Shown: positions 2,109 through 22,006 of the stretch, piece by piece
Position numbering within the stretch: position 1 is the first letter of the stretch
Layout: each line of letters opens with the position of its first letter
Assembly (NCBI RefSeq): GCF_006345805.1
Contig: NC_043021.1
Span: forward strand, 9,734,001 to 9,798,000
Direction: 5' to 3'
Source of the DNA: Octopus sinensis
Lineage: Eukaryota
DNA length: 64,000 bases
Notes under the pieces: model-generated
What the model was told of the DNA's origin: nothing
What the model saw: the letters and a program-made list of their open reading frames with translations, nothing else
Database searches by the model: none
Position numbers and translations under genes: made by a program

Positions 2109-2418
2109 CATGAGTGAATGAGGCCAATATCCTGTTGTTCTGTTGGAGAAACCGAGCGTGGTAATAGCGTGTCTTGCATAGACGCTGGCTGAGGGGATCA
2201 AGAGATTTGGGTTTGATAGTGTTGCACTGAAGTGTGTCATTCTAGTGGCTACATAGAGAGGTACTAAGCTTTGAAAGATTACACCACTGTCCCTGTATTC
2301 ATACTGTAGTGCTTGTACAAAGTAGTCAACATATTTTTTAGTGCCTGCATAAACAGTCAGTTGGGGGGTGATATTGATGCAGCTAGCTGAAGACATCATA
2401 ACTATGGCACCTCGCTTT
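2109..2418 (-). CDS. HSDL1: HSDL1-like, coding exon 7 (catalytic S and YxxxK)
   Basis: ATTTCAG acceptor; KRGAIVMMSSAS...VYAGTKKYVDYFVQALQYEY...RTTGYWPHSLM; GTAAGT donor. Confidence 0.93.
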
Positions 2419-3109
2419 CTGAAATGTGAAATTTGGAGGCGGATTAAATTAGTTAAACAACACCATAAAAAAAAAACTGTTCAATTTCAGATGTCAATTT
2501 TTGTATCTATTTTTCGGTGCAAACTACAATGTTTTTGCTATCGATAGTAGTAGTAGTCGCAGCAGCAGGTATGTTTGTTCCTTTTCGAGCCATGCCTGGC
2601 TCATAAGGGCCAGTTTTCCGGTTTCACTGGCATATAGGTTCCCCACCTGGATAGGATGCCAGTCCATCAAAGGTGAGCTGCTAGATGCAGGAGGAAAGGG
2701 TGAGAGAAAGTTGTGGTGAAAGAATCAGCAGAAGTTCGCCATCACCTTCTGCCGGAGCCACGTGGAGCTTAGGTGTTTCACTCATAAACACACAAACATC
2801 GCCTGGTCTGAGATTCGAAGCCACAACCCCTCGACCACGAGTGCACTGCTCTAACCACTAGGCCATGTTCTTCCACAGTAGTAATAGTAGTAATCCTTTC
2901 TTATTTTGGCACAAGGCCAGCAATTACAGAGGAAGGAGGTAAGTCAATTACATCGATCCCAGTACTTGGCTCCAACTTATTTTATCGACCCAGAAAGGAT
3001 GAAAGGCAAAGTCGACCTCAGAACATAAAAATGAACGAAATACCACTAAGTATTTTACCCAATAATAGCGGTGACAGTGGTGAAATAATGATGTGGCATT
3101 AATTATGGT

Positions 3110-3450
3110 GGTGTTGACGGTGGCTCATACCTTCACATCAAATTCATCATTGAAATCATTATTGACCCTTACCTTACTGCATCTTTCTACATAGCTTACA
3201 TAAAGTTCTCACAAGTCATTTACCTACACCTAATTTCATTAGTAACCACCAAATCACCTAGTATGGTACCCAGTGAAACACCTTCTCCAAGTTCAACAGG
3301 TGCCAAGAATAGTGATTTACTCTTAGCCAAGTATTTCTCCTGTAATTGCCTCAAAGGAAGATTGCATTCATGGTACTTCTGCTAGGCACAAACCCAAACT
3401 GCATCTTATCAAGGCCTGCTTTGTCATGGATCAATTGTGCTGTAACGCTC
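3110..3450 (-). mobile_element. RTE LINE reverse-transcriptase fragment (degenerate)
   Basis: MQFGFVPSRSTMNAIFL*RQLQEKYLAKSKSLFLA...LEK resembles the RTE motif QFGF.PGRSTTDAIF..RQLQEK. Confidence 0.7.
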
Positions 3451-3508
3451 TCTCTCCATAACCTGATTCAGTTGTTTGATTCTTCTATAGTTTTTTTTTC
3501 CTCTAAGG

Positions 3509-4168
3509 CAGTGTTTCTGAACCTTTTTACCCTTGTGTAACCCTTAAAACCCCTGCACAAAAAAAAGTATATACCATATCTTTCACATATTTTTCATCAT
3601 AGTTCACATGGTAAATATCTCTCTTTTACTTGTTTCAGTCATTTGACTGCGGCCATGCTGGAGCACCGCCTTTAGTCGAGCAAATCGACCCCAGGACGCA
3701 TTCTTTGTAAGCCTAGTACTTATTCTATTGGTCTGTTTTGCTGAACCGCTAAGTTACGGGGACGTAAACACACCAGCATCAGTTGTCAAGCGATGTTGGG
3801 GGACAAACACAGACACACAAACATATATACATATATACAATGGGCTTCTTTCAGTTTCCGTCTACCAAATCCACTCACAAGGCTTTGGTCAGCCCAAGGC
3901 TATAATAGAAGACACTTGCCCAAGGTGCTGCACAGTGGGAATGAACCCGGAACCATGTGGTTGGTAAGCAAGCTACTTACCACACAGCCACTCCTGCACC
4001 TAATTATATATATATCATATATATAATTATATATATAATGTATGTATATGCACATATAACGTACATGTATAGGAATATTATGATCATGAAATTAGCATTA
4101 GCTTATCTCACACTTTCTTGCGGAACCCCTAGGAACCTTTTGCAGGGAACCATGGTTGAGAAACGCTG
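3509..4168. mobile_element. hAT-type MITE with nested SINE
   Basis: TIRs CAGTGTTTCTGAACC / GGTTGAGAAACGCTG; exact 8-bp TSD CTCTAAGG (3501-3508, 4169-4176); SINE-A inserted at ~3622-3998. Confidence 0.8.
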
Positions 4169-4855
4169 CTCTAAGGTATCTCCTCTGCCTAAACATGGAA
4201 TTATAACCAGAAAGTATGAAAGGGCATGGCCAAGTCATTAGATATTGCACTCACAAGAGTGAGATCATGGTTTTGAATACCAAACTGGTGGAGTGTTGTG
4301 TTCTTGAGCAAAACACTTCATTTCATGTTGGTTCAGTCCACACAGCTGTAAATGATTAACCCTGCAATGGATGGGTTGTCCATTCAGGGTAAATACTGGC
4401 CTGCCTGCTTAACCAGCGAGGCAACAGGCAGCATTCAAAAGCTAAAACAATGTGAGTTACATAGTCATCAGTGGTGTAAATAACCAGATCTGAGAATCTG
4501 GTTGACCCCGTGATAATGTGACAACAGCAAAATAGAAAGAGAACACCATGGTGCAAATGAATTGGGGAGCTTGCAGAATAATGTTGGAATTATGTCAACT
4601 GACTACATAGAAAGATGTGAAACACTGATCGAAACAAACGTAGAATATATATAAAGATAAAGGTTGTAAATATTGGGCCATCATCCGTGAACTCAGACAC
4701 CAACTCCCAGCCACTCTAAGAGTCAGCTGTTCATTTGTAACTGGGCTGATCCACTGGGAGTTTATGAATGCATTACTTGTTATTCCAAATTAGTCTTCTT
4801 CCTAAATGCTTATTATTCTAGCCTGATAGGGTTGTTTTGCATAAGATAAACTTAC

Positions 4856-4890
4856 CTGGAGACCATCTGTGGCAGTATCATATACGTCAT
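4856..4890 (-). CDS. HSDL1: HSDL1-like, coding exon 6
   Basis: TCTTTTCAG acceptor; MTYMILPQMVS(R); GTAAGT donor; ends in phase 2. Confidence 0.88.
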
Positions 4891-5485
4891 CTGAAAAGAA
4901 AATATATCACATTATATATATATTCTTTTATTCTTTTGTTTGTTTCAGTTATTTGACTGTGGCCATGCTGGAGCACCACTTTTAGTTGAGCAAATCGACC
5001 TCAGGACTTATTTGTTGTTAGCCTAGTACTTATTCTATCGGTCCCATTTGCCGAACCACTATGTTACAGGGACGTAAATACACCAGCATCGGTCGTCAAG
5101 TAATGTTGCGGGGGGACAAACACAGACACACAAACATATACATACAAGGCTTATATAACTTACTATTATAGTTACTAGATGAGGAATTACTGTCACCACT
5201 ACAAACTCGTTATTTCTCTGGTTAGAACATGTATGAGTGTGTGTGTGTGTACTTATTCTATTGATATCTTTTGCCAAACTGCAAAAGTTATAGGGACATA
5301 AACAGATCCATGCCAGTTGTTAAGCAGCTATGGCGGACAAACACAGACACAAAGACACACACACATCATACATAAATAAACATACATACACACAATCATT
5401 TACATCCATATAGACCTATCTATAAATGTTCTAATATCTACACAGCCTTGGTTTTTTTTTATCTCATTACGCAAAAAATTATTTT

Positions 5486-5487
<2 letters not shown>

Positions 5488-5562
<75 letters not shown>

Positions 5563-5580
5563 GATAGGCAGGCAGACATC
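5488..5580 (+). repeat. (GACA)n microsatellite
   Basis: Direct inspection. Confidence 0.9.
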
Positions 5581-6593
5581 ACCAAGCATATGTACAAAAG
5601 TAATATCATCAGACAAAAAAAATTACAAAAACTTCTCACCAAACAGAAGTGAGAGAAGTAACATCAGTAAACATGAGTCATAAATAATGTGACTATGACT
5701 GGACACATATGACTATAGAAATAGTATGACTAAATATGTATGATCACAGAACCGTTTCAACTACATTAATGTGACTAAAGATGTATCAAATACATGTGAC
5801 TACAGATGTAATGTGACTAAACATAAGTAGAGAAGTACTGTGATTAGACAAATGTGACTAATTGTGTGACTACTGATGTAATGTTACTAGATATACATAA
5901 CCACAAGTATGTAATTTATGAGTTAGCCCTTTAAAATTCAGATTATTTTGTCAAATGTAATGCTTATTTATTCACATTGTTTTGAATTAATTGTGCATTA
6001 TCTTGCAGCTTTGAGATTTTGAAAATGTCATTGTATATTTTTAAAATGATATTGTAGAGTAGGTGTGAGAGGCTGGATCTGACCAGTGTGAACATATGAT
6101 AGGTAGAAGACTTGAGCCAGTTTGAACATATAACTGGTAGAATATCTGGGCCAGTTTAAACATACCTGGGAGAATATCTGGACTAGTTTGAACATATAAT
6201 TGGTAGAATATCTGAGCAAGTTTGAGCATATCATCATCGTTTAACGTCCGTTTTCCATGCTTGCATGGGGTGGTCAGTTCGACCAGGGTCTCGGAAGCCA
6301 GGAGGCTGCACCAGGCTCCAGTCTGATCTGGCAGTGTTTCTATAGCTGGATGCCCTTCCTAACACCAACCACTCCACGAGTGTAGTGGGTGCTTTTTACG
6401 TGCCACCGGCACAGGGGCCAGAGGGGGCGCTGGCATCGGCCACGTTCAGATGGTGCTTTTTACGTGCCACTGGCACAGATATCACAACTACAATTTCCAT
6501 TTGATTCTTATTTTGATGCATATAACTGTTAGAATGTCTGGGATGGTTTGGGCCCAAATGCTAAAGAGTTAAGCAAGTCAGTTGAACACTTAC

Positions 6594-6638
6594 CATAGTT
6601 GTGGCTGAGATATTGACATTAATAAGTTGCCAGAGTCT
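6594..6638 (-). CDS. HSDL1: HSDL1-like, coding exon 5
   Basis: TTGTTACAG acceptor; RLWQLINVNISATTM; GTAAGT donor; phase 0 to phase 0. Confidence 0.9.
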
Positions 6639-7516
6639 CTGTAACAAAACAAAATGATAAAAACTATGTTAAACTACAATAGAATTATAATGAAGGCATA
6701 CTTTAAATATATTTCTCTTACATTGCATGTCTACAGGGAAGCTTAAAGAATTATTTCAGCTAATGAGGAAGCTTTTATATCAGACATGGGCAATTTTTCA
6801 ATGAAAATTGGGCAGCATGAGACATGGCTGATCAACAGACAGGTTGCACTACTAAAAAAATTCAAGGTAATTTTTTTATTAGGCATGCCTTTCAGAAAAT
6901 CCATGACTGTTCTATATAGTCATTTGACCTACTAGAAATAGTAGCTAAGTCTCCTTCAAATTTCATCCAACCAACTTTAAAAAATGAAGGACGCTTTAAA
7001 TAAAGAGATCTTAGATACAGTACATCTGAAGGAAAGATGGAATGGCCATAATCATAGTGCCCTTAATCATAGATCTGGGTTGAGACTGAACATCCACCCC
7101 ACCACTTCCAACACAACTCTTGGAAGCCACAACCTGGATACTCAACCTCTTTGAAGCAGCAACCAAATTTCCCTAAAATCATGCCCTACCATCTTACAAA
7201 AGGGCACATTGGATAATATAACTCTGGATTCCCTGGACCAGTGAAAAAGACAGGATGGTCATGGCTGGAATGCATTTGATTCCAGACCGCCACTGCCTTG
7301 CAACCATACCCAGCCATGGGAAAGGCTCATGATTATATAGGAACATAAAACAATTAGTGATGGCATGGTACAAGCTTCCAGATCATGGTCGCGAGTGATG
7401 GCTATGCCTGTTTCCATCAACTGAACCACTCCACAGTCAATGCCCCCCTCTTCAGCTTATCATTTATAATAATTTTACATTCCAGTTTGAAGCTCAATAT
7501 AAAACAGACCACTCAC

Positions 7517-7575
7517 CTCCTCGGGGACTTCAAGAAATAACTGTGGATAATGGTACATAACTCCAACATTATTGA
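7517..7575 (-). CDS. HSDL1: HSDL1-like, coding exon 4 (NNVG motif)
   Basis: TTTTTTCAG acceptor; INNVGVMYHYPQLFLEVPEE; GTGAGT donor. Confidence 0.9.
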
Positions 7576-8099
7576 CTGAAAAAATTTGATAAATAAATAA
7601 ATATATAGATAAATCAACTAATTTGTCATTAGCAATGAAAACAGTATTAGTTCAAATTAGCAGTCTGTGCATTACACTTAATGCAGATACACTGTAGCAA
7701 GCCTGGAAACTGTGGCATTTGTCTCAAGAAAGAATCTCTTATAGATGTATAGTGCTAAAAGACACTAGTGTCTAGCAGCAGTGGTGAAATTGCATCATCA
7801 TTAGCAAGCATCCACTAGCCCTACATGCTAAGACAAATTTAACCTACATTGATATAGAAAAACAGTGATTAATAAATCACTGGTGTTGCAATTAGCTGGC
7901 AGGCAGGATTTTGATATTAGCAACACAGAACATAGTATATCTGGGTTAAGTGTGACATACAGAATGCTAATTTGAACTAGTACTGCTCTCATTGCTAAAT
8001 AAACTAAAGACATAGTGCAAAGTAATAAGCATGGCTTTTGACCAGCTATGCAGTTACTGGCTGTAGCTAGTGACTAGACAGACAGACATTAGTCCTAGG

Positions 8100-8440
8100 T
8101 GTTCACTAGACAGACAGTTATTGGTTGTAAGTAGTGACTCAACAGGTAGTCATGACTCAACAGACAGACATTGGTTGTAGGAGGTGACAGACAGCTATTG
8201 GCTGTGAGTAGTGACTCAACAGATATATTGGCTGTAAGTAGTGACTCAACAGATATATTGGCTGTGAGTAGTGACTCAACAGATATATTGGCTGTAAGTA
8301 GTGACTCAACAGATATATTGGCTGTGAGTAGTGACTCAACAGGTAGTCATTGGCTCTAGGTAGTGACCCCACAGACAGACATTGGTTGTAGGAAGTGACT
8401 CAACAGACAGATATTTGCTGCAGGCGGTGACTCAACAGAC
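8100..8440 (+). repeat. 30-bp minisatellite (AGATATATTGGCTGT[G/A]AGTAGTGACTCAAC)
   Basis: Five near-perfect units at 8191-8340 alternating G/A, with degenerate flanking units. Confidence 0.9.
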
Positions 8441-8519
8441 AGGTGTTGACAAGACAGACATAAGTTATGGATGACAAGTGAACAGACACAGAGATTGTGG
8501 GTGATGTTTAGGCAGGTAC

Positions 8520-8830
8520 AAAGTGTTTGTGCAAGGTTTTCTTCTGCCTAATTCAGAAAGAGGAGCTTGCAGTACCTCTAAGTAACTCCTGTAGTTTCTG
8601 CATGGACCAAAGCATCTCCAGTCTTTATTTCACCTGAGGTTTGAGCATCCTAAGGTCAACTATTACCATATCCTTATGTCTTTCTTGGGATTCCTTTCCT
8701 GCTGCTTCCTTCCACCTGGGTAACTTGGCACTTCTTTACCCAATAGTTATCCTTCTTATGCATCACATGTCTGTAGCAGAACAGTGTTCTCTCTTGTACA
8801 CTACAGCCAATTTCTCTTATACCAAATTCT
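8520..8830 (-). mobile_element. RTE LINE 3' coding fragment
   Basis: RHVMHKKDNYWVKKCQVTQVEGSSRKGIPRKT resembles the RTE C-terminal GHV.R...WVKK....VEG...RGRPRKTW. Confidence 0.65.
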
Positions 8831-8939
8831 AATAGATAAAAAGATAAATATGCCAACATGGAAAGTGGATGTTAAAGGATGATGATGAAACATATATACA
8901 CATATATATACAAATATACACACATGCATGTATACACAG

Positions 8940-9332
8940 ACAATCTGTGCTGGTGGCATGTAAAAAGCACCATTCAAGCATGATTGTTACCAGCGTCACC
9001 TTACTGGCACTTGTGCCAGTGGCATGTGAAAAAACATTTGAGCGGGGTCGTTGGCAGTACCACTAGACTGGCTCCTGTGCAGGTAGCATGTAAAAAAACA
9101 CCCTCTGAGCGTGGCCGTTGCCAGTACTGCCTGACTGACCCTCATGCCGGTGGCACGTAAAAGCACTCACTACACTCTCGGAGTGGTTGGCATTAGGAAG
9201 GGCATCCAGCTGTAGAAACTCTGCCAGATCAAGATTGGAGCCTGGTGCAGCCATCTGGTTCGCCAGTCCTTGGTCAAATCGTCCAACTCATGCTAGCATG
9301 GAAAGCGGATATTAAACGATGATGATGATGAT
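8940..9332 (+). mobile_element. RTE-tailed SINE family C with (GAT)n tail (representative copy)
   Basis: Internal GTGCCGGTGGCAC repeats, GGTTGGCATTAGGAAGGGCATCCAGCTGTAGAAAC core, (GAT)n tail. Others at ~6231, 21240, 25437, 27185, 28295, 47145, 59255, 63035. Confidence 0.8.
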
Positions 9333-9602
9333 ATATATATGTATATAATACATTCACATACGCACATGGATAATGACATTAGGAAAAACAAATTCAGATT
9401 TCAACATTTATTTCTAACACAGGCCACACCACAAGGCCACATATTTTCTAAGAGGTATGTGGGTACACTCAATCACAGCTACACCAGTATCTGATTAAAC
9501 TTAATTCTATCAACCCCATAAATAGACATAACTAAATATCACAAATGACACAAACCATTTTGTAACCATTTTTCTACTTATTTTAACAATGTACCCTCCC
9601 CA

Positions 9603-9922
9603 CCATGGAGGCACATGGCCTAGTGGTTAGAGCAGCAAATTCGCGGTCGAGGGATTGCGGGGGTTTGAATCACAGACCGGGCGATGTGTGTGTTTATGAG
9701 CGAAACACCTAAGCTCCAAGCGGATCTGGCAGAAGGCAATGGCGAAACTTCTGCTGACTCTTTCGCCACAACTTTCCCTCACTCTTTCCTCCTGCATCTT
9801 GTAGCTCACCTGCAAAGGTGCCGGCGTCCCGTCCAGGTGGGGAACCTATATGCCAAGGAAACCATGGAAACTGGCCCTTATGAGACAGGCGTGGCTCGAG
9901 AAGGAACAAACAACAACAACCC
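9603..9922 (+). mobile_element. tRNA-derived SINE family D with (AAC)n tail (representative copy)
   Basis: A/B-box-like head TGGCCTAGTGGTTAGAGC...GGTTTGAATC. Others at ~2570-2878, 16035-16207, 24725-25095 (minus). Confidence 0.75.
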
Positions 9923-9940
9923 TCTCCCACCAGAATTTAC

Positions 9941-10335
9941 TCTTTTACTTGTTTCAGTCATTTGACTGCGGCCATGCTGGAGCACCGCCTTTAGTCGAGC
10001 AAATCGACCCCGGGACTTATTCTTTGTAAGCCCAGTACTTATTCTATCGGTCTCTTTTGCCGAACCGCTAAGTGACGGGGACGTAAACACACCAGCATCG
10101 GTTGTCAAGCGATGTTGGGGGGGGTGACAAACACAGACACACAAACACACACACACATATATACATATATACGACAGGCTTCTTTCAGTTTCCGTCTACC
10201 AAATCCACTCACAAGGCATTGGTCGGCCCGGGGCTATAGCAGAAGACACTTGCCCAAGATGCCACGCAGTGGGACTGAACCCGCAACCATGTGGTTGGTT
10301 AGCAAGCTACTTACCACACAGCCACTCCTGCGCCT
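9941..10335 (-). mobile_element. tRNA-derived SINE family A (representative copy)
   Basis: tRNA-like head (GGCTGTGTGGTAAG...GGGTTCAGTCCC), central microsatellite, tail ...CAGCATGGCCGCAGTCAAATGACTGAAACAAGTAAAAGAG. More than 15 copies or fragments, e.g. 3622-3998, 29660-29998, 43790-44285, 47340-47755, 48635-49033, 55618-55992, 62295-62668. Confidence 0.85.
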
Positions 10336-10416
10336 CCAGCCACTCCACATTCAATATAAAACATTCTTTTTTTAAAAAATCTGCACAAGAATATAATATG
10401 AGGTATTGGCACTTAC

Positions 10417-10527
10417 TTAGAATTCCTATTTCTTTGTCCTTAATCTGTGACCAAATTTTTTGATAAACTTCTTGGTTAGCAGAAAAGTCTACAACAATGG
10501 GAATGACTTCAACACCGAACTGATGTG
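10417..10527 (-). CDS. HSDL1: HSDL1-like, coding exon 3 (the only complete copy, at the end of the tandem array)
   Basis: TTTTTGCAG acceptor; AHQFGVEVIPIVVDFSANQEVYQKIWSQIKDKEIGIL; GTAAGT donor; 111 nt keeps the frame between exons 2 and 4. Confidence 0.9.
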
Positions 10528-13500
10528 CTGCAAAAATGAAATATAAACAAGAATTGAATGATTAAGATAACCAGTTAATTAAGATGACACCAGCAGATAA
10601 TCTGTTAGATAGAACAGGTTATCTACTGATATAAATATAAAATAAGTATTTAGAATTAAGGGCTGTTAGCAGAAAAGTCTACAACAATGGGAATGACTTC
10701 AACACCAAACTGATGTGCTGCAAAAATGAAATATAGACAAGAATTGAATGATTAAGATAACCAGTTAATTAAGATGACACCAGTAGATAATCTGTTAGAT
10801 AGAACAGGTTATCTACTGATATAAATATAAAATAATATTTAGAATTAAGGGCTGTTAGCAGAAAAGTCTACAACAATGGGAATGACTTCAACACCAAACT
10901 GATGTGCTGCAAAAATGAAATATAGACAAGAATTGAATGATTAAGATAACCAGTTAATTAAGATGACACCAGTAGATAATCTGTTAGATAGAACAGGTTA
11001 TCTACTGATATAAATATAAAATAATATTTAGAATTAAGGGCTGTTAGCAGAAAAGTCTACAACAACGGGAATGACTTCAACACCGAACTGATGTGCTGCA
11101 AAAATGAAATATAAACAAGAATTGAATGATTAAGATAACCAGTTAATTAAGATGACACCAGCAGGTAATCTGTTAGATAGAACAGGTTATCTACTGATAT
11201 AAATATAAAATAAGTATTTAGAATTAAGGGCTGTTAGCAGAAAAGTCTACAACAATGGAATGACTTCAACACAAAACTGATGTGCTGCAAAAATGAAATA
11301 TAGACAAGAATTGAATGATTAAGATAACCAGTTAATTAAGATGACACCAGTAGATAATCTGTTAGATAGAACAGGTTATCTACTGATATAAATATAAAAT
11401 AATATTTAGAATTAAGGGCTGTTAGCAGAAAAGTCTACAACAATGGGAATGACTTCAACACCAAACTGATGTGCTGCAAAAATGAAATATAGACAAGAAT
11501 TGAATGATTAAGATAACCAGTTAATTAAGATGACACCAGTAGATAATCTGTTAGATAGAACAGGTATCTACTGATATAAATATAAAATAATATTTAGAAT
11601 TAAGGGCTGTTAGCAGAAAAGTCTACAACAACGGGAATGACTTCAACACCGAACTGATGTGCTGCAAAAATGAAATATAAACAAGAATTGAATGATTAAG
11701 ATAACCAGTTAATTAAGATGACACCAGCAGGTAATCTGTTAGATAGAACAGGTTATCTACTGATATAAATATAAAATAAGTATTTAGAATTAAGGGCTGT
11801 TAGCAGAAAAGTCTACAACAATGGGAATGACTTCAACACCAACTGATGTGCTGTAAAAATGAAATATAAACAAGAATGAATGATTAAGATAACCAGTAAT
11901 TAAGATGACACCAGTAGATAATCTGTTAGATAGAACAGGTTATCTACTGATATAAATATAAAATAATATTTAGAATTAAGGGCTGTTAGCAGAAAAGTCT
12001 ACAACAATGGGAATGACTTCAACACCGAACTGATGTGCTGCAAAAATGAAATATAGACAAGAATTGAATGATTAAGATAACCAGTTAATTAAGATGACAC
12101 CAGTAGATAATCTGTTAGATAGAACAGGTTATCTACTGATATAAATATAAAATAATATTTAGAATTAAGGGCTGTTAGCAGAAAAGTCTACAACAATGGG
12201 AATGACTTCAACACCAAACTGATGTGCTGCAAAAATGAAATATAGACAAGAATTGAATGATTAAGATAACCAGTTAATTAAGATGACACCAGTAGATAAT
12301 CTGTTAGATAGAACAGGTTATCTACTGATATAAATATAAAATAATATTTAGAATTAAGGGCTGTTAGCAGAAAAGTCTACAACAACGGGAATGACTTCAA
12401 CACCGAACTGATGTGCTGCAAAAATGAAATATAAACAAGAATTGAATGATTAAGATAACCAGTTAATTAAGATGACACCAGCAGGTAATCTGTTAGATAG
12501 AACAGGTTATCTACTGATATAATATAAAATAAGTATTTAGAATTAAGGGCTGTTAGCAGAAAAGTCTACAACAATGGGAATGACTTCAACACCAAACTGA
12601 TGTGCTGCAAAAATGAAATATAGACAAGAATTGAATGATTAAGATAACCAGTTAATTAAGATGACACCAGTAGATAATCTGTTAGATAGAACAGGTTATC
12701 TACTGATATAAATATAAAATAATATTTAGAATTAAGGGCTGTTAGCAGAAAAGTCTACAACAATGGGAATGACTTCAACACCAAACTGATGTGCTGTAAA
12801 AATGAAATATAAACAAGAATTGAATGATTAAGATAACCAGTTAATTAAGATGACACCAGTAGATAATCTGTTAGATAGAACAGGTTATCTACTGATATAA
12901 ATATAAAATAATATTTAGAATTAGGGCTGTTAGCAGAAAAGTCTACAACAATGGAATGACTTCAACACAACACCGAACTGATGTGCTGCAAAAATGAATA
13001 TAGACAAGAATTGAATGATTAAGATAACCAGTTAATTAAGATGACACCAGTAGATAATCTGTTAGATAGAACAGGTTATCTACTGATATAAATATAAAAT
13101 AATATTTAGAATTAAGGGCTGTTAGCAGAAAAGTCTACAACAATGGGAATGACTTCAACACCGAACTGATGTGCTGCAAAAATGAAATATAGACAAGAAT
13201 TGAATGATTAAGATAACCAGTTAATTAAGATGACACCAGTAGATAATCTGTTAGATAGAACAGGTTCTACTGATATAATATAAAATAATATTTAGAATTA
13301 AGGGCTGTTAGCAGAAAAGTCTACAACAATGGGAATGACTTCAACACCAAACTGATGTGCTGTAAAAATGAAATATAAACAAGAATTGAATGATTAAGAT
13401 AACCAGTTAATTAAGATGACACCAGTAGATAATCTGTTAGATAGAACAGGTTATCTACTGATATAAATATAAAATAATATTTAGAATTAAGGGCTGTTAG

Positions 13501-13684
13501 CAGAAAAGTCTACAACAATGGGAATGACTTCAACACCGAACTGATGTGCTGTAAAAATGAAATATAAACAAGAATTGAATGATTAAGATAACCAGTTAAT
13601 TAAGATGACACCAGTAGATAATCTGTTAGATAGAACAGGTTATCTACTGATATAAATATAGAATAGTATTTAGAATTAAGGGCT
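10475..13684 (-). repeat. Tandem array of 17 x ~189 bp, each unit = intron-2 3' end + first 53 nt of HSDL1 exon 3
   Basis: GTTAGCAGAAAAGTCTAC recurs at 10475, 10665, 10854, 11043, 11233, 11421, 11609, 11799, 11985, 12174, 12363, 12552, 12741, 12929, 13121, 13307, 13496. Confidence 0.95.
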
Positions 13685-13932
13685 GGGTTCTGTTGCTCTT
13701 AATGATTTGGTCTGAAGAGGAAGGGTAGTGATCATCACCTTTTTTTCAGAACCTTCATGACTGATGGGACGAAAGGAGGTGTTATCCTCAGATAAAAACA
13801 CTTGACCTGTTTAATAAACACACCTTCGTGTACACACATACAATGTACATGCATATATGTGTGTGTGTGCATGTATATGTATGTGTATATAAAATATACA
13901 TATAACAAAATGAGTTGATAAAGGAATAAACA

Positions 13933-14160
13933 ATTATCTTGTGAACTTCATTAGCTTGCAGCTGTTTCTGCTATAAGATATGTTGGACTCATAGTTGAGT
14001 GCCTGGGTAACACCTTATAGCTTCATCAGAGCCTTGAATATGAAGCACTTCATATTCAAAGTTCCAATGAAGCCATAAGGTGTTACCCAGGCACCCAACT
14101 AGGAGTCCAACATATCTTATAGCAGAAACAGCTGCAAGCTAATGAAGTTCATAAGATAAT
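13933..14160. repeat. 228-bp near-perfect palindrome with hammerhead-like cores (Penelope-like terminus)
   Basis: Arms pair around 14046-14047; the minus strand reads CTGATGA-stem-GAAAC-AGCTG. Confidence 0.75.
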
Positions 14161-14171
14161 CATCTCTTTTA

Positions 14172-14385
14172 TATTTATATATATATATATATATGTGTGT
14201 GTGTATATATATATGTGTGTGTTTGTGTGTGTACGTACGTATATATGTATGAATGAATGTGTGTGTGTGTATATATATATGTGTGTGTGTGTATATATAT
14301 ATATATATGTGTGTATGTATATATATGTATATATGTATGTATGTGTATGTGTGTATATGTGTATGTATATATATATGTGTGTATG

Positions 14386-14434
<49 letters not shown>

Positions 14435-14599
14435 GTGTGTGTTTGTGTGTGTACGTACGTATATATGTATGAATGAATGTGTGTGTGTGTATATATATAT
14501 GTGTGTGTGTGTATATATATATGTATGTGTGTATGTATATATATATGTGTGTATGTATATATATGTATATATGTATGTATGTGTATGTGTGTATATGTG

Positions 14600-14644
<45 letters not shown>

Positions 14645-14651
14645 ATATGTG

Positions 14652-14691
<40 letters not shown>
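14172..14691. repeat. Compound (TA)n/(TG)n microsatellite with a 220-bp higher-order repeat
   Basis: Block GTTTGTGTGTGTACGTACGT...GAATGAATG at 14221 and 14441; source of the long spurious Y/I/H/T ORFs. Confidence 0.9.
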
Positions 14692-14694
<3 letters not shown>

Positions 14695-14933
14695 GACTGT
14701 AGAAAGCACACTCAATACCATAGTAGAGATAAATAATATATTTCATTTTGGTTGAGTCAATCTCTTGCAACACTGAATTTTGTCTGTGAGTGTACCCATT
14801 AAAAGGATGGTCATGGACAGAGTGGCTTTCATCATAGGTGGATTCAATCAGTGTTGACCAACAGGAATAACAACAACAACACCATCACCCAGCCATACAC
14901 AAGAGAAACCAGCTGCAATCACATTCGACTTAC

Positions 14934-15056
14934 CTATACTTTCAGCCGTTTTCTTCAGTAGCGTGTCACCTTTACTGACTAGTATGAGATTCATTCCCCG
15001 ACTGGCCAGTTCATGGGCGTAGGCTTTCCCAATACCCTCACTGCTTCCAGTAACAA
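14934..15056 (-). CDS. HSDL1: HSDL1-like, coding exon 2 (Rossmann TGxxxGxG)
   Basis: TTACAG acceptor; VVTGSSEGIGKAYAHELASRGMNLILVS; GTAAGT donor; phase 1 to phase 1. Confidence 0.92.
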
Positions 15057-16425
15057 CTGTAAGATACAAACATAAAGAAACAAATTAATAACCCTTTCTA
15101 CTATGGACACAATGACTGAAATTTGTGAGAGGGGGATAGTTGACTACATCGACCCCGAAAGGATGAAAGGCAAAGTTGACCTCGGCGGAATTTGAACTTA
15201 GAACATAGCGACAGGCAAAATACCACTATGCATTCTGCTCAGTGTGCTAACGATTCTCATTTCTTTATTGGCCACAAGGGGCTAAACATAGAGGACAAAC
15301 AAGGGCAGACAAAGGGATTAAGTCAATTACATCGACACCAGTGTGTAACTTGTACTTAATTTATCGACCCTGAAGGGATGAAAGGCAAAGTTGACCTCGG
15401 CGGAATTTGAACTCAGAACATAGTGACAGGCGAAATATCACTTTGCATTTTGCTCGACGTGCTAACGATTCTGCCAACTCACCGCCTTTGGAAATAAATT
15501 AATAATAAAGTGAAAGATTTATCTACTCAGAGTGAGGAGAAACCAATGTAATAATGGTTTCAAATTCAGGCACAAGATGAAAGGCAAAGTCAAGGATTTG
15601 AACTCAGAACATAAAGTCATGAAATGCTGCTAAGCATTTTGTCTGGCATGTTAATGATTTTTCCAGCCCACCACCTTAACCAGAATAATAATTGTTTCTA
15701 CTAAAGGTAGAAGGCCTGAAATTTTGGGGGAGTGGGGCTAGTTGACTACATTGACACCCCCGAAGTGTTTCACTGGTACTTAATTTATTGACCTTGAAAG
15801 GATTAAAAGCAAAGTTGACTTGGGAGAAATTTGAACTCAGAACATAAAGGCATATGAAATGCCACCAATCATTTCCTCCAGAATGCTAATGATTCTGCCA
15901 GCTCACTGCCTTTAACCAGAATAATAATAAAAACAAAAACAGCAGTCTTTGAAATGGTGCTGAAGATTAATCAGGCTCAAGTTTGCTGCATGATGGATCT
16001 CTTGTAGTTACAATGATGAACATTCACTTGTTTGGAAAGAGTGAGAAAAAGTTGTGGTGAAAGAGTCAGCAGAAGTTCACCATTACCTTCTGCCGGAGCT
16101 GCGTGGAGCTTAGGTGTTTCGCTCATAAACATACACATCGCCCGGTCTGAGATTTGAATCCGCAATCCCTCGACCGCGAGTCCGCTGCTCTAACAACCAC
16201 TAGGCCATTTTACCTGCACTTTGATGCCTGGGGATGCTTCAGAATATCCTGGGTGGGCACTAATTCGTAATGATGCTAAAGAGGAGTTTCAAAATAAGGA
16301 CATCACTATAAATTTGAGAGTGCACCACTGAATGCCATCCATTGTACCCCCTTAGCAACAGGCATGCAAGTATCATAGTTCACCAATGTTATCTGAGTAC
16401 CAAGGTGAAAATAGCAACCCTTAGG

Positions 16426-17330
16426 TATTCAGATTACCCTGTCAAAAGCAATGCTTGTTTATTCACATTGTTTTGCATTGCTGTTGGCATCCTTTTTGTC
16501 TCGGGAGACAATGGAGTTGCGCATAAAATAATCTTGTCTGGTTTTTACATTCCATGTCCTAATACATCTCCTGCTGTGGCTGTGTAGTCCTATCCTGGAC
16601 AAACACTCCCTCTGGCAGGTGCCGCAAATGTAGCGAAGGCTTTGCCCGACTGGTTGTAATGTTATAGTTTCTTGTTGATGTCTTTTCTTTCCATTTCTCC
16701 TCTCTCTCTCTCTCCTTTGTGTTCCTTCTTCTACGGTGCATCGCCAATCTCCACAGTTGCTAATATTGATGTCGCATGCCTTCATGTCCCTTTTGCAAAC
16801 ATCCTTGTATCGTAAGAACTGTTTTCCCACAGACCTAGTGCCCCTAGCAAGCTCTCTGTAGAGTATGTCCTTGGGAATTCTGCCATCTTCCATACGACTA
16901 ATATGTCCAAGCCATCTTATACGTCTTTGTATGAGGAGTGCAAACATGCTTGGTATTCCTGCTTGCTTGAGGACATCTTTGTTGGGGACATGATTCTGCC
17001 ATTTTATGCCAAAGATTTTCCAGAGGCAGCGCAGGTGAAAGATATTTAGGCAACACTCTTGTCGTGTGTATGGCATCCAGGTCTCACTGCCATGCAGTAG
17101 ACTGCTAAGTACACATGCCTGGTAAATCTTCATCATTGTTTTGCATTAATCATACAATATCTCACAGCTCCAAGATTTCAATGATGTGATTGTTTAGTTT
17201 GAGAATGACACTGTAGGATAAGGTATGGGAGGCCAAACCTGGCCTGTTTGAGCAAAAAACAGGTAAAATATTTTTGCTAGATATGGTCCGTTTTAATCCT
17301 AAAGGGTTAATTCACACCCATCGTCCTTTG
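16426..17330. mobile_element. piggyBac-like MITE (CCCTT...AAGGG-TTAA) interrupted by the RTE copy
   Basis: Ends AAAGGGTTAA; body matches another copy at ~5921-6230 once the RTE insert is removed. Confidence 0.6.
16480..17133 (-). mobile_element. 5'-truncated RTE LINE with 14-bp TSD
   Basis: YQACVLSSLLHGSETW...RWLGHISRMEDGRIPKDILY plus terminal CxxC...HxxxC; TSD CATTGTTTTGCATT at 16466-16479 and 17134-17147. Confidence 0.9.
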
Positions 17331-19952
17331 CACATGATTAATGAGGCACACCTTTGATCAAGGCTTGTTACTAACCCGGCTGAAACCGGCTCTGGCTCTA
17401 TAGTACAAATGTCTTGTTTTCATAAGTTTTGAATTAAAATCTTCCACCAAACCTTAGTCACAATTTATGTTCCTAACACTAGCTGAATGATAACCAAGTT
17501 ATTTTACTAAATTCTTTGTTATATTTAAAGTAATTGAAAGAAACACAGAGCATCTCAAAATAAATACAGTAACTTCTGCTTTGGTTGTCATCTGAAAATT
17601 CCCTTATCTCGCATCTTACCATCTTGTAACCTCTAGACACAGACATACTCCAGATAACATCTAACACAGATACGTTATCTGTTAATAGTTCACCCTTTTC
17701 TGTACCAATGTGTCCTCCACTCACACTGACTTCACGGCACAGCCACAAACTGAGTAAAACTCACAATACATAGTCTCTAGAACTCACATATTTTTTTTAT
17801 TGTTGTTTAACCACGGGGCATCCCTAGTTGAGCAGACCTATGACATGGATGTTCAAGCCTTAAACATCGATGTTTTGTCCCGAATTAGACCTGGTCGAGC
17901 AGAACAATGTATAAAGGTATTCCAATGACAAAATGACAAGTAGAACAAAAAACGGTAAATTTTCAGAGTAAAATTTACCAAAACACAAATGAATCCAAGC
18001 TTGTGGTGCACCCGAGCACTGTATACAATAATTTCATTATTATTATTTTTACTTAGACACTAGTGCCTTTGATATAATTAAGCTCAACAGGACAGTTTTA
18101 CCCCACAGACATTAATCCATAGGAACAAAAAAAAAAAAGAAAAGCATTCAAAACTCTCGACGATATAAGAACGAGTTTATCTCGTAATTGAAACTCATGA
18201 AAATAATTGCGCGAAATGATATTTCAAATCTGTTGAGTTGAATACGCTGATAAATTAGACCAACATTATACGAGTCATTTAAGTATTAACGGTGCAATTA
18301 GTAATTAATTGTAAATTTGGGTGACAAAAACAGGGATACTTGATGAAGTGAAACTGTAAATAAATTTCTGTTAACGAAATATCAAATTATATAGAAGCAT
18401 TAATCGATATATATATACACACGCACGCACGCACAGCCGTGTCGTTGAGAAACTTCGAAACCCAATGGGTTTAAGTTCAATCTCAAACCCATGTGTTTGT
18501 ATTTAGCAGTAAAAAAAAAAAAAACCAATGTTACGCCCCTTAATGTCAAAGAATACCAAGAGTGAATATGGTCGACTTAAAAAACCCCTTTTTAGCATGT
18601 GTCACAAAGTGGCTGCAGTGCAATGACCGAGGCCCTCCAACGAGTTTTTTTTTGGGTTTTTTTTTAAGAGTGTTAGGGAGGACGATCTTACCATTTAGAA
18701 TATTGATTGTTAATATAAGTACAAAGACAAATTTAAGGAGATGTCAGTTTCACGCTCTTGACTGGTGCTTTAGTTTATCGACTTCCACGAGGAAGAAGGC
18801 AATACAACTTCAAGATTTGAACTCATTTAAAATATTTTTTTAAAAAACACAGAAATTTTCTGACCCCCACCTCCTTTAATTTATTTATTTAATATCAAAA
18901 TGAATGGAATAGCAACAAAAAAAAAAACAGAAAAATGAGTGAAGTACATTTCGAGATTTCGTTACGTATCATTAATGTCGTGAGTTCAGTTTTCACCAGG
19001 GTCGACTTCGCCTTTCATCCTCCAGAGGTCGTTAATATAAAGTACCAGTCATAATTACAAGGATCGATATAACTAATTTAAGTACTAAACTGAAATATAA
19101 TGAATGTTTATGGAAAACAAAACTAAAAAGTTGTTGATGTGTTGACTAATTCTAAATATATTCATCCTAACAGGATTTCCTTTCTAGTATTCTAATAACT
19201 GTTCTATTGAAGGTAACCTTTCCATTTAATAGATAAGACACATCAAGACTTAATTAAAAAAAAAAAAAGGGACTCGCAGCATAAAACAATGTCACATTTT
19301 CTTTAAAGGGAAAAACTACAAGAGCATAGCAAGTGACTTTTATTTTGATAACTTAGAGTATAACAAAAATAATGAGTAGTATATTTATTTCTTTGGTAAT
19401 ATAGTTTGTATGAGTGTGAGGGGACAGAAAAAACAATACAAATAAAGGAAACAGACTCCGTTTCTTGTCTAGCTTAAAACTAAGTTACGGTGGGTCAAGG
19501 TCATTGGAAAACTATCACATTTCATAAGTTCTTACGCGTATTAAAAATGTTTTGTCTCGAGCGATCCGGTGTTTCGAGCAAAGAAAACTTTACTTTAATT
19601 CACATATAATAAACTCGAGCAAACATAAATGTCGACATGATAGGGAGGGGTCAGTTTTGTTTGTGTTTTGCTTGTTAGTTGGTTTTTTTCGCATAGAAAC
19701 TATTCCTTTTCGAAAAAAAAGTATCTTGACAAACTTCGCTGACGCGGTTTCAAAAGCAAGCTTCTGCTAAAGCGAGCGGTCTAAAAAAAAAAGGTGGGGT
19801 AAAAACAAATTAAATCTCTTGGTTTAAAACTGACCAGTATAATTAGGTCTGCATAAATTCACGAGAAATTCAAGAGGGTTACGTATATGTGAAACAAACA
19901 AACGCAATACAACCGCACGCACTCATAAACGTTAATTGCTAAACATACCTAC

Positions 19953-20160
19953 CTGCCCATTTGCCATAGAGCTGCTTAAAGTCTGACTGTTGTACTTTAC
20001 TCAACACATGGCAATTACACGAACGCAATATCGTGTACGTGAAACCAATTACTTTTTTAGCGCCGTAGTATACTCCAAGAATTGCTAAAGTGTCCCGGGC
20101 AGAAGAAAACACCTCGGCACATTGCCGAAAGAGGAGGCCGAAGCTGTCAACATAAGCCAT
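19953..20160 (-). CDS. HSDL1: HSDL1-like SDR, coding exon 1
   Basis: MAYVDSFGLLFRQ...LYGKWA resembles the HSDL1 N-terminus (human MAAVDSFYLLYRE...QYGRWA, recalled). Ends G|GTAGGT, phase 1. Confidence 0.9.
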
Positions 20161-20797
20161 CGTCGAATGCCATTGGTAATAAACCCTCTGCTAGAATTGG
20201 AGAGCACAGTCGGCTCAAGGCTGATAACTCTATCTATCTCAAATGATTTCTGTTCCTTGTGTTGTTTCATTGAGGAGTGGAGACCGGAGATGCGGCGACC
20301 TGGCAGAATCGTTATAACGCCGTGCGAAATGCTTCGCGGTATTTCGTCTGCCGCTACGTTCTGGGTTCAAATTCCGCCGAGGTCGACTTTGCCTTTTATC
20401 CTTTCGGGGTCGATAAATTAAGTACCAGTTACTGGGGTCGATATAATCGACTTAATCCGTTTGTCTGCCCTTGTTTGTCCTCTCTGTGTTTAGCCCCTTG
20501 TGGGTAGTAAAAAAATAGGAGATGCGAAGAAAGTGAGAATTCTCGTCACGCCTCCAAAACGCACAGCATACGAACTTTTATTATTATTATTATTATTATT
20601 CTTAATTAAAAGGTGCAACAATTTAGATCTCATAACCATGGCAACCCATCAACTTTTGTTGCATAAACAGGAAAGTACAGAACTTTCCATAGTCTACATT
20701 ACTGCATGTACTTTATATGCACTTTCTGACAAGTTGTGGTGCACCTGAGCACTGTATACAATAATTTCCTTATTATTATTATTATTTATTTAAATTT

Positions 20798-21079
20798 GGC
20801 ATTCCTTCGATATGGCTCGACAAAAATCAAAACAGTTCACTTCGGGGTATTTCCGCGGGTTGTGGAGTATAGACATAACGAAGATATATGCCAGCAATGG
20901 CTCGTTTTAAACTTGAAGAAAAAAAAGGCCTTGCATATTTGTTCTTACCTGTTTCGTGTGTGTGTGTGTGTAAAACCGCAAATTGCCAAGCAGAAAACAG
21001 AATCGAACTGTCATTTGCTTCCACGGAAATACCCGAAGTGAAGTGTTTTGATTTTGTCGAGTTATATCGAAAGAATGCC
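20798..21079. mobile_element. MITE with ~55-bp TIRs (GGCATT...AATGCC), copy 1
   Basis: Long imperfect TIRs; flanks TTAAATTT / TTAAAATT (7/8 match, TSD-like). Confidence 0.75.
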
Positions 21080-21915: not shown

Positions 21916-21953
<38 letters not shown>

Positions 21954-21975
21954 TGTGTATATGATAGAGAGAAAG

Positions 21976-22006
<31 letters not shown>

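What the first reader, a model, noticed from the sequence alone, without database searches (positions are those of the whole stretch)
10417..13684. Sixteen decoy splice acceptors plus half-exons stacked in front of HSDL1 exon 3
Seen: the 189-bp tandem unit, read on the coding (minus) strand, is the last ~136 nt of intron 2 (including TTTCATTTTT(G/A)CAG) plus the first 53 nt of exon 3 (AHQFGVEVIPIVVDFSAN). Only the last of the 17 units continues into the rest of the exon and its GTAAGT donor. In the other 16 the frame runs GCT AAC AGC CCT TAA into a stop, with no consensus donor nearby. The unit junction also creates a new CTAAC-AG motif, and each unit carries a second TCTATCTAACAG acceptor-like site. 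Established: exon definition couples an acceptor to a downstream donor. Inference: the spliceosome must ignore 16 essentially identical, more proximal 3' splice sites over 3 kb. The array could act as a copy-number-variable rheostat of productive versus NMD/truncated HSDL1 mRNA, or as a natural test of exon definition against first-AG scanning.
Basis: partly seen in the sequence, partly recalled or inferred. Interest (0 to 1): 0.85.

Follow-up and report, generated by a model that had tools for sequence, protein, structure and literature searches.

The report
Splice acceptor repeated 17 times in tandem
In the East Asian common octopus, a young 189-bp tandem repeat has copied the splice acceptor and first 53 bases of HSDL1 exon 3 sixteen extra times into the preceding intron; it is a real, lineage-specific curiosity and a natural splicing experiment, but nothing shows it regulates anything.

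Summary
Window 10475-13685 holds 17 head-to-tail copies of a 189-bp unit. On the minus strand each unit is the last 136 nt of intron 2 plus the first 53 nt of exon 3 of an HSDL1 orthologue. Only the 17th copy continues into the rest of the exon and its GTAAGT donor. All 16 others run into a stop, and no donor in the array matches the consensus better than 5/9.

The window is Octopus sinensis GCA_006345805.1. RefSeq model XP_029651264.1 uses the last acceptor. O. vulgaris, O. bimaculoides and Argonauta hians each carry one copy, so the array is specific to O. sinensis and probably no older than about 2.5 My. Three recurring unit haplotypes form a 3-unit higher-order repeat. That argues for real growth by unequal exchange rather than an assembly artefact, although the exact copy number is uncertain.

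HSDL1 is intact, with pN/pS 0.17 against O. vulgaris. The closest known things are minisatellites whose first unit spans an exon-intron boundary and repeats the donor (F7 IVS7, IFI6, CBS, LMNB2, PDGF). This is the acceptor-side mirror image, and I found no described counterpart.

The rheostat idea has no support: the array is not conserved and no transcript data were reachable. The most likely reading is a tolerated intronic minisatellite, with the exon-adjacent acceptor chosen by exon definition.

The parts
10475..13685 (-). 189-bp x 17 tandem array. Each unit is the last 136 nt of intron 2 plus the first 53 nt of exon 3.
   Evidence: TRF; unit boundaries; unit anatomy.
10665..13684 (-). Units 1-16, the decoy modules. 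Each has branch-point candidates, a pyrimidine tract, a CAG acceptor and a 53-nt half-exon, and then runs GCT AAC AGC CCT TAA into a stop. Unit limits: 13684-13496, 13495-13307, 13306-13121, 13120-12929, 12928-12741, 12740-12552, 12551-12363, 12362-12174, 12173-11985, 11984-11799, 11798-11609, 11608-11421, 11420-11233, 11232-11043, 11042-10854, 10853-10665.
10475..10664 (-). Unit 17. It contains the authentic acceptor (AG at 10529-10528) and the first 53 nt of the real exon 3. It is a type-B-like haplotype.
10417..10527 (-). HSDL1 coding exon 3 (111 nt, phase 1 to phase 1), encoding (A)HQFGVEVIPIVVDFSANQEVYQKIWSQIKDKEIGIL.
   Evidence: The junctions match the O. vulgaris and O. sinensis proteins.
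10417..10474 (-). Distal 58 nt of exon 3, which is not duplicated. It is 66% purine with 3 GAR motifs, and is the only sequence that distinguishes the real acceptor from the decoys. The equivalent stretch after a decoy is 38% purine with 0 GAR motifs.
10411..10416 (-). Exon 3 donor, TAA|GTAAGT. It is the only donor matching the consensus at 7/9 or better downstream of any of the 17 acceptors.
14934..15056 (-). HSDL1 coding exon 2 (123 nt), donor TAG|GTAAGT. This is the 5' splice site that has to choose among the 17 acceptors.
10528..14933 (-). Intron 2, 4406 nt here, against about 2018 nt in O. vulgaris and about 2050 nt in O. bimaculoides. The excess is the 16 extra units.
13683..13685 (-). 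Upstream breakpoint. The CAG in ...GAACC-CAG-CCCTTAA is a possible 3-nt microhomology with the ancestral exon sequence GCTAA-CAG-AGAAG.
   Evidence: Alignment with the single-copy orthologues.
10472..10474 (-). Codon 129, the first codon after the duplicated segment. It is CAA (Q) here and in Argonauta, and AGA (R) in O. vulgaris and O. bimaculoides. It lies exactly at the downstream breakpoint.
10780..10818 (-). One example (unit 16) of the hairpin found in every unit: CAGTAGATAA-CCTGTTCTATCTAACAG-ATTATCTACTGG. It encloses the second acceptor-like site TCTATCTAACAG. 15 copies match at 3 or fewer mismatches.
   Evidence: MFE -24.7 kcal/mol, z -4.3.
644..20160 (-). The whole HSDL1 coding region, eight exons: 20160-19953, 15056-14934, 10527-10417, 7575-7517, 6638-6594, 4890-4856, 2418-2109 and 763-644.
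   Evidence: The translation is identical to XP_029651264.1.

Best explanation
This is a young, Octopus sinensis-specific minisatellite.

Origin and growth:
- A 189-bp segment straddling the intron 2/exon 3 boundary of HSDL1 was duplicated in tandem at a 1-3-nt microhomology.
- It then grew to about 17 copies by unequal exchange or replication slippage, in steps of one unit and of three units (567 bp).
- The one copy that keeps the rest of the exon is the most downstream, so the 16 extra copies lie inside intron 2. Each is a complete 3' splice-site module followed by a half-exon that runs into a stop.

How splicing copes:
- The productive mRNA joins exon 2 to the 17th, exon-adjacent acceptor.
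- The most likely reason is exon definition. Only that acceptor is followed by the purine-rich distal half of the exon and, 111 nt downstream, a strong GTAAGT donor.
- Decoys that do get used, most plausibly numbers 15 and 16 or the first-transcribed ones, would give transcripts with a premature stop. These are expected to be degraded by nonsense-mediated decay.

Net effect: a tolerated, neutral or slightly costly passenger, not an evolved regulator.

Shown: the structure, the gene identity, lineage specificity, the internal haplotype structure, the intact and constrained ORF, and the absence of donors in the array. Inferred: the duplication mechanism, exon definition as the selector, and the NMD fate and low usage of the decoys.
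For: - Array and unit anatomy.
- Source and annotation: the window is O. sinensis GCA_006345805.1. The spliced product using the last acceptor is identical to RefSeq XP_029651264.1, which is annotated as a single isoform.
- Lineage specificity: the unit is single-copy in O. vulgaris (an ONT-based assembly), O. bimaculoides and Argonauta. Intron 2 is about 2.0 kb there and 4.4 kb here.
- Age: mean pairwise substitution divergence between units is 0.015 (maximum 0.032). Sinensis-vulgaris intronic divergence is 0.044 and pS is 0.033. The species split is put at about 2.5 My.
- Real growth history: three multi-site unit haplotypes recur in the order AACCAC|BCC|A|BCC|BCC|B, with lag-3 and lag-7 minima.
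- Consequence of decoy use: all 16 decoys give a stop at 122-130 aa, and no donor in the array exceeds 5/9.
- What marks the real acceptor: the real distal half-exon is 66% purine with 3 GAR motifs, against 38% and 0 after a decoy.
- Gene still functional: the ORF is intact and pN/pS is 0.17.
- Precedent: in donor-side boundary minisatellites the exon-adjacent site is the one used (PMC1557585).
Against: - No RNA evidence was reachable. The choice of the last acceptor rests on a RefSeq gene model and on conservation of the protein.
- Decoy 16 paired with the real donor would make a 301-nt exon, and decoy 15 a 490-nt exon. These sizes are not obviously beyond exon definition.
- Upstream decoys are transcribed first and are locally indistinguishable from the real site.
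- pN/pS is computed over both lineages from only 12 differences, so it cannot exclude a recent loss of constraint.
- The copy number comes from a single assembly. The 12 private 1-bp deletions in the array show that it was poorly polished.
Confidence: 0.68

Rival explanations
1. Leaky decoys, giving a hypomorphic allele. A substantial fraction of HSDL1 pre-mRNA is spliced to decoy acceptors, or is stalled with intron 2 retained because 16 U2AF/U2 sites compete. Productive output in O. sinensis is therefore clearly lower. This would be a non-adaptive splicing load that varies with copy number.
For: - All 17 modules are locally equivalent from -136 to +53.
- Upstream copies are transcribed first.
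- Decoys 15 and 16 are within 490 and 301 nt of the real donor.
- In IFI6 and CBS, the pseudo-sites nearest the authentic donor are used constitutively (PMC1557585).
Against: - RefSeq annotates a single isoform.
- The ORF is still intact with a low pN/pS.
- In F7, LMNB2 and PDGF only the authentic site is used.
- There is no direct RNA data either way.
Confidence: 0.2
2. Adaptive rheostat. Copy number of the array is maintained or tuned by selection to set the ratio of productive to NMD-targeted or truncated HSDL1 mRNA.
For: Only by analogy. Boundary VNTRs can be polymorphic (F7 alleles carry 5-9 repeats), and the array shows recent multi-unit expansions.
Against: - The array is absent from three other octopods, including the sister species.
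- It is younger than or about as old as the species split.
- The units evolve like neutral sequence.
- No tissue, population or expression evidence exists.
Confidence: 0.04
3. Assembly artefact. The true genome has one or a few units, and the long-read assembler inflated the array.
For: - A single assembly supports it.
- The array carries 12 private 1-bp deletions in short homopolymer or dinucleotide runs and one 5-bp insertion. This is typical of poorly polished long-read consensus.
- The sister species has one copy.
Against: - Multi-site haplotypes recur in non-adjacent units: the 5-site type B in units 7, 11 and 14, and type C identical in units 6, 8, 12, 15 and 16. They form a higher-order pattern, which random error or read mis-joining does not produce.
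- Variant states at unit columns 118 and 133 match real states in O. vulgaris (C, G) and O. bimaculoides (T, A).
- A 3.2-kb array is easily spanned by single long reads.
Confidence: 0.07
4. The unit is something else: a structured RNA or miRNA cluster, a coding repeat, or a dispersed transposon-derived satellite that merely overlaps the exon.
For: Each unit contains a stable hairpin (z -4.3 and -4.1 on the two strands).
Against: - No Rfam family reaches its gathering score. The only hits inside the array are at E=1.
- The stem is only about 14+5 bp.
- There is no ORF of 50 aa or more in the array on either strand.
- The unit is found nowhere else in the window.
- It is colinear with single-copy intron/exon sequence in the orthologues.
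Confidence: 0.01

Closest known systems
Human F7 intron 7 VNTR (37-bp minisatellite whose first unit spans the exon 7/IVS7 boundary; Borensztajn et al. 2006, PMC1557585)
   Same: [quoted passage not shown] Only the exon-adjacent copy is used physiologically.
   Different: - F7 repeats the donor (4-8 pseudo-sites, 37-bp unit, 4 nt of exon). Here the acceptor is repeated (16 decoys, 189-bp unit, 53 nt of exon).
- In F7 the authentic site is transcribed first, so kinetic order and exon proximity agree. Here the authentic site is transcribed last, so they disagree.
- F7 usage and polymorphism are shown experimentally. Here neither is.
IFI6 (6-16) intron 2, CBS intron 13, LMNB2 and PDGF boundary-spanning minisatellites (as summarised in PMC1557585)
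   Same: Long arrays (25 pseudo-sites in IFI6; 15-20 repeats in CBS; 10-15 x 100 bp in LMNB2; 16-18 x 81 bp in PDGF) that repeat a splice site inside an intron. The copy numbers and unit sizes are comparable to this array.
   Different: All of them repeat donors. In IFI6 and CBS the two pseudo-sites nearest the authentic one are also used; whether the equivalent decoys 15 and 16 are used here is unknown.
Engineered tandem duplications of 3' splice sites in globin genes (cited in PMC1557585 as refs 40-42; Reed & Maniatis 1986, from my own knowledge)
   Same: Identical acceptors compete in cis for one donor. The outcome depends on proximity and on the flanking exon sequence, which is exactly what differs between decoy and real copies here.
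   Different: Those were two-copy artificial constructs assayed in vitro or by transfection, and they gave conflicting results. This is a natural 17-copy array in a 4.4-kb intron.
Decoy exons / decoy splice sites that promote intron retention (Parra et al. 2018, from my own knowledge; not checked here)
   Same: Intronic splice-site-bearing elements that may engage spliceosome components unproductively.
   Different: Described decoy exons are conserved, have both an acceptor and a donor, and are single elements. These units lack any donor and are not conserved.

Membership tests
Boundary-spanning minisatellite that repeats a splice site (F7/IFI6/CBS/LMNB2/PDGF class) | Tandem array of many near-identical units tens to hundreds of bp long, inside an intron. 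| tested here: met
   189 bp x 17 copies, 97% matches; mean substitution divergence between units 0.015.
Boundary-spanning minisatellite that repeats a splice site (F7/IFI6/CBS/LMNB2/PDGF class) | The terminal unit straddles the exon/intron boundary, so the authentic splice site sequence recurs in the intron. | tested here: met
   Unit 17 holds the real acceptor plus 53 nt of exon, and 16 upstream copies repeat it. The difference from the described members is that the acceptor is repeated, not the donor.
Boundary-spanning minisatellite that repeats a splice site (F7/IFI6/CBS/LMNB2/PDGF class) | Only the exon-adjacent site, or it plus its nearest neighbours, is used in mature mRNA. | tested here: inconclusive
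   The RefSeq model and the orthologous proteins fit use of the last acceptor. No transcript data were reachable.
Boundary-spanning minisatellite that repeats a splice site (F7/IFI6/CBS/LMNB2/PDGF class) | Copy number is polymorphic in the population (VNTR). | not testable with these tools
   Only one O. sinensis assembly is available. The higher-order structure shows recent multi-unit changes, which makes polymorphism likely but does not show it.
Conserved regulatory decoy exon / poison exon | Conserved across related species. | tested here: not met
   Single copy in O. vulgaris, O. bimaculoides and Argonauta.
Conserved regulatory decoy exon / poison exon | Has both a 3' and a 5' splice site, so that it can be defined as an exon. 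| tested here: not met
   No GT in the array matches MAG|GTRAGT better than 5/9, and there is no GTRAG at all.
HSDL1 (SDR family) orthologue | adh_short domain and best reciprocal similarity to proteins named HSDL1. | tested here: met
   Pfam PF00106 at 3e-32. Top hits are named HSDL1 across molluscs and vertebrates. The product is 100% identical to XP_029651264.1.
HSDL1 (SDR family) orthologue | 'Inactive' status: catalytic Tyr replaced, as in human HSDL1 (from my own knowledge). | tested here: not met
   Octopus and other molluscs keep Y in TVYAGTKKY where human has F in AAFSASKAY. The 'inactive' label is probably inherited from mammals.
Structured RNA / miRNA cluster | A match to a curated RNA family, or a pre-miRNA-sized hairpin. 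| tested here: not met
   No Rfam hit reaches its gathering score in 9500-15500. The hairpin in each unit has only about 19 bp.

The most novel reading that the evidence does not exclude
This is the first natural acceptor-side boundary minisatellite. Seventeen complete, locally identical 3' splice-site modules compete for one donor, and the authentic one is transcribed last. Kinetic ('first come, first served') models and exon-definition models therefore make opposite predictions. Decoys are used at a measurable rate that depends on copy number, which would make HSDL1 output a VNTR-tuned quantitative trait in O. sinensis.
Probability: 0.15. Interest if true: 0.65.

Novelty: new variant of a known kind. 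Interest (0 to 1): 0.42.

Why it matters
Boundary-spanning minisatellites on the donor side (F7, IFI6 and others) have been used to work out how a 5' splice site is chosen among identical copies. In those cases the authentic site is both exon-adjacent and transcribed first, so the competing models cannot be separated.

Here the authentic acceptor is exon-adjacent but transcribed last, behind 16 complete copies of itself. A simple count of exon 2 junction reads that continue past nt 53 would show how strongly exon definition overrides transcription order for 3' splice sites, and it would do so in an invertebrate with long introns.

The array also illustrates how an intron can grow by 3 kb in about 2 My or less by duplication across a splice site without killing the gene.

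If all transcripts use the last acceptor and copy number has no effect, it is simply a neutral curiosity.

Tried and rejected
- Transcript evidence, search 1: a protein search with the 70-aa exon 2 plus decoy peptide passed only 2 candidates through the word prefilter and gave no hits. This is uninformative.
- Transcript evidence, search 2: an exact look-up of the two predicted 130-aa truncated products found neither in the collection. The full-length protein is there only from genome annotation, so there is no transcript-derived positive control and the negative result carries little weight.
The same protein was reached as P0121 through the cluster listing.
- Structured RNA or miRNA: rejected.
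- Coding repeat on either strand: rejected.
- Dispersed repeat: rejected for this window and the orthologous loci.
- Recursive splicing: rejected, because the acceptors read CAG|CACATC and do not regenerate a GT.
- Pseudogenisation of HSDL1: no support.
- Acceptor-side counterpart in the literature: two searches found none. One search was rejected for syntax and its replacement returned nothing relevant. The library is limited, so this is not proof of absence.
- Splice-site strength models (MaxEnt): not available offline. They would not separate the copies anyway, because the copies are identical from -136 to +53 apart from G/A at -4 and a few distal variants.
Full report
**1. The observation**

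Tandem Repeats Finder reports a 189-bp period with 17.0 copies, 97% matches and a score of 6033 at window 10475-13685. No other tandem repeat in the 64-kb window scores above 342.

On the minus strand there are 17 copies of CATTTTT[G/A]CAG|CACATCAG, spaced 186-192 nt apart. Each unit is 136 nt of intron followed by 53 nt of exon. Only the copy whose exon side starts at 10527 continues into CAAGAAG...GGAATTCTAA|GTAAGT.

If exon 2 is joined to any of the other 16 copies, translation stops after 122-130 residues instead of 336. Thirteen of these read ...VVDFSANSP*.

**2. The gene and the source**

The minus strand carries eight coding exons with canonical AG/GT boundaries: 20160-19953, 15056-14934, 10527-10417, 7575-7517, 6638-6594, 4890-4856, 2418-2109 and 763-644.

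The product has an adh_short domain at 3e-32. Its best homologues are named HSDL1 from molluscs to mammals. It is 336/336 identical to Octopus sinensis XP_029651264.1.

The locus fetched for that protein matches window 23160..1 at 100% identity. The window is therefore O. sinensis assembly GCA_006345805.1, chromosome CM016883.1. RefSeq's single annotated isoform uses the 17th acceptor. The O. vulgaris, Argonauta and other mollusc proteins have the same exon 2/3/4 junctions.

**3. Lineage specificity**

| Species (locus) | Copies of the unit | Intron 2 length |
|---|---|---|
| O. sinensis (window) | 17 | 4406 nt |
| O. vulgaris (L001) | 1 | about 2018 nt |
| O. bimaculoides (L002) | 1 | about 2050 nt |
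| Argonauta hians (L003) | 1 | not measured |

The O. vulgaris reference was built from ONT long reads, so a 3-kb array is unlikely to have collapsed there. One copy is therefore the ancestral state, and the array arose on the O. sinensis lineage.

That paper puts the sinensis-vulgaris split at about 2.5 My and the split from O. bimaculoides at about 34 My. Substitution-only divergence between units averages 0.015 per site, with a maximum of 0.032. Between the two species, divergence is 0.044 in introns of this locus and 0.033 at synonymous sites. The first duplication is therefore no older than roughly the species split, and many units are much younger.

**4. Internal structure: real or artefact?**

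The units fall into three multi-site haplotypes:

| Type | Units | Features |
|---|---|---|
| A | 1, 2, 5, 10 | TTTTTACAG |
| B | 7, 11, 14, and partly the real unit 17 | Five linked variants |
| C | the remaining nine | Consensus-like |

- Their order is AACCAC | BCC | A | BCC | BCC | B. This is a three-unit (567-bp) higher-order repeat that includes the exon-adjacent copy. Divergence has minima at lags 3 and 7.
- Units 6, 8, 12, 15 and 16 are identical in substitutions, and so are units 7, 11 and 14.
- Two of the variable sites show the states found in O. vulgaris (C, G) and O. bimaculoides (T, A).
- This pattern is what unequal exchange produces. Assembly noise does not produce it.
- Twelve private differences are 1-bp deletions in short homopolymer or dinucleotide runs, and there are no private 1-bp insertions. 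These look like unpolished long-read consensus errors.
- I conclude that the array exists, that the figure of 17 could be off by a little, and that the frameshifts in decoys 4, 10 and 13 may not be real. I put the probability of a wholesale artefact at about 0.07.

**5. Breakpoints**

Upstream, unique intron sequence ...GAACC-CAG-CCCTTAATTC runs into unit 1. Every junction between units reads GCTAAC-AG-CCCTTAATTC.

In O. vulgaris and O. bimaculoides exon 3 reads GCTAACAGAGAAG (codon 129 AGA, Arg). With that sequence, the duplication would have used a 3-nt CAG microhomology. The present O. sinensis exon reads GCTAACCAAGAAG (CAA, Gln), as does Argonauta. There are two possible orders of events:

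- The duplication came first and the real exon later changed from AG to CA.
- The change came first and the duplication used a 1-nt microhomology.

Codon 129 is the only amino-acid replacement that polarises to the O. sinensis lineage, and it sits exactly on the breakpoint. This may be coincidence. It may also be a by-product of a single error-prone replicative repair event. I cannot decide between these.

**6. Splicing logic**

- Each unit is a self-contained 3' splice-site module. It has YTNAY branch-point candidates 34, 47 and 51 nt upstream, a 72-nt AG-free zone, a 75% pyrimidine tract and a CAG.
- AG scanning from a committed branch point can therefore only reach that unit's own AG. The choice among the 17 copies is made when U2AF/U2 commit, not by scanning from the donor.
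- The copies are identical from -136 to +53, apart from G/A at -4 and a few distal variants. Whatever marks the real site must lie beyond +53.
- The real exon's distal 58 nt are 66% purine with three GAR motifs and end in TAA|GTAAGT. The same stretch after a decoy is 38% purine with none.
- Inside the array no GT matches the donor consensus better than 5/9, against 7-8/9 for the gene's real donors.
- This fits exon definition as the selector, which is an inference from established splicing biology. It is not airtight. Decoy 16 with the real donor would give a 301-nt exon and decoy 15 a 490-nt exon, and the upstream decoys are transcribed first.
This hairpin is also present in the single-copy orthologues. 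O. bimaculoides lacks the AG there.

**7. State of the gene**

The ORF is intact. Compared with O. vulgaris there are 7.5 synonymous and 4.5 non-synonymous differences, giving pN/pS 0.17. The gene has therefore not visibly decayed. The test covers both lineages and has little power.

**8. Alternative identities**

- No Rfam family reaches its gathering score in 9500-15500. The sub-threshold miRNA hits fall in a TA/TG microsatellite and in a palindrome upstream of the array.
- There is no ORF of 50 aa or more in the array on either strand.
- The unit occurs nowhere else in the window or in the fetched loci.

**9. Comparison with what is known**

Borensztajn et al. (PMC1557585) describe a class of genes in which a minisatellite's first unit spans an exon-intron boundary and so repeats the donor:

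| Gene | Array | Sites used |
|---|---|---|
| F7 IVS7 | 37 bp x 5-9 | Authentic only |
| IFI6/6-16 | 25 pseudo-sites | Authentic plus the two nearest pseudo-sites |
| CBS IVS13 | 15-20 repeats | Authentic plus two pseudo-sites |
| LMNB2 | 100 bp x 10-15 | Authentic only |
| PDGF | 81 bp x 16-18 | Authentic only |

The octopus array has the same architecture and scale, but on the acceptor side. I found no acceptor-side example, although the searchable library is limited.

The acceptor-side case is more informative than the donor-side ones. The authentic site is transcribed last, so transcription order and exon proximity pull in opposite directions.

**10. Verdict**

The array is a real, young, O. 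sinensis-specific boundary-spanning minisatellite.

- Most likely it is a tolerated passenger whose decoys are largely ignored because they lack a downstream donor and exonic enhancer context (0.68).
- Alternatively the decoys leak substantially (0.20).
- An adaptive rheostat is unsupported (0.04).

It is a new variant of a known kind. Interest is moderate, because existing RNA-seq could immediately turn it into a clean test of 3' splice-site choice.

Noticed in passing
window 9936-10348 (minus-strand sense): A tRNA-like SINE of about 413 bp is inserted 69 nt downstream of the exon 3 donor in O. sinensis only. It is absent at the orthologous site in O. vulgaris and O. bimaculoides. A related copy lies at about 3623-3997. 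The element carries GTG|GTAAGT at 10314-10309. If that were used as a donor, exon 3 would be extended by 102 nt in frame, adding 34 aa.
   Followed up: partly
window 10472-10474: Codon 129 is CAA (Gln) in O. sinensis and Argonauta, and AGA (Arg) in O. vulgaris and O. bimaculoides. This dinucleotide difference falls exactly at the downstream breakpoint of the duplication, and it is the only amino-acid change that polarises to the O. sinensis lineage.
   Followed up: partly
window 13967-14126: A 160-nt near-perfect palindrome in intron 2, just upstream of the array. It gives sub-threshold Rfam hits on both strands (mir-190 at 36 bits against a gathering score of 48, and mir-2319). It is probably a foldback or MITE-like element.
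   Followed up: no
HSDL1 exon 7, window about 2330-2360 (protein residues about 217-221): HSDL1 in octopus and other molluscs keeps the catalytic Tyr of the YxxxK motif (TVYAGTKKY), where human HSDL1 has Phe (AAFSASKAY). The 'inactive' label in the annotations is probably inherited from mammals and may not apply.
   Followed up: no
L001 about 10548-10560 (O. vulgaris intron 2): O. vulgaris has a 26-bp deletion in the stretch homologous to the unit, lying between short direct repeats. It removes the branch-point candidates at -47 and -51. This suggests that the functional branch point lies within the last 40 nt or so.
   Followed up: no
window 16462-17145 (minus strand): A 228-aa ORF in intron 1, on the same strand as the gene, that looks like the C-terminal part of a retrotransposon polyprotein. 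I did not search it.
   Followed up: no
window about 27000-29400: An apparent tandem duplication of about 1.1 kb: the same long minus-strand ORF translations appear twice, about 1.1 kb apart. The period is too long for TRF.
   Followed up: no
L002 (O. bimaculoides), protein P0004: The O. bimaculoides RefSeq model (289 aa) lacks exon 1. It also skips the 35-nt exon 6 and reads through intronic sequence into exon 7. This looks like a mis-annotation rather than a real difference.
   Followed up: no
window 8196-8439: A 30-bp x 7.9 minisatellite in intron 3 whose unit contains GTAAGT-like and CAG-like motifs (TATTGGCTGTAAGTAGTGACTCAACAGATA on the plus strand). I did not examine it further.
   Followed up: no
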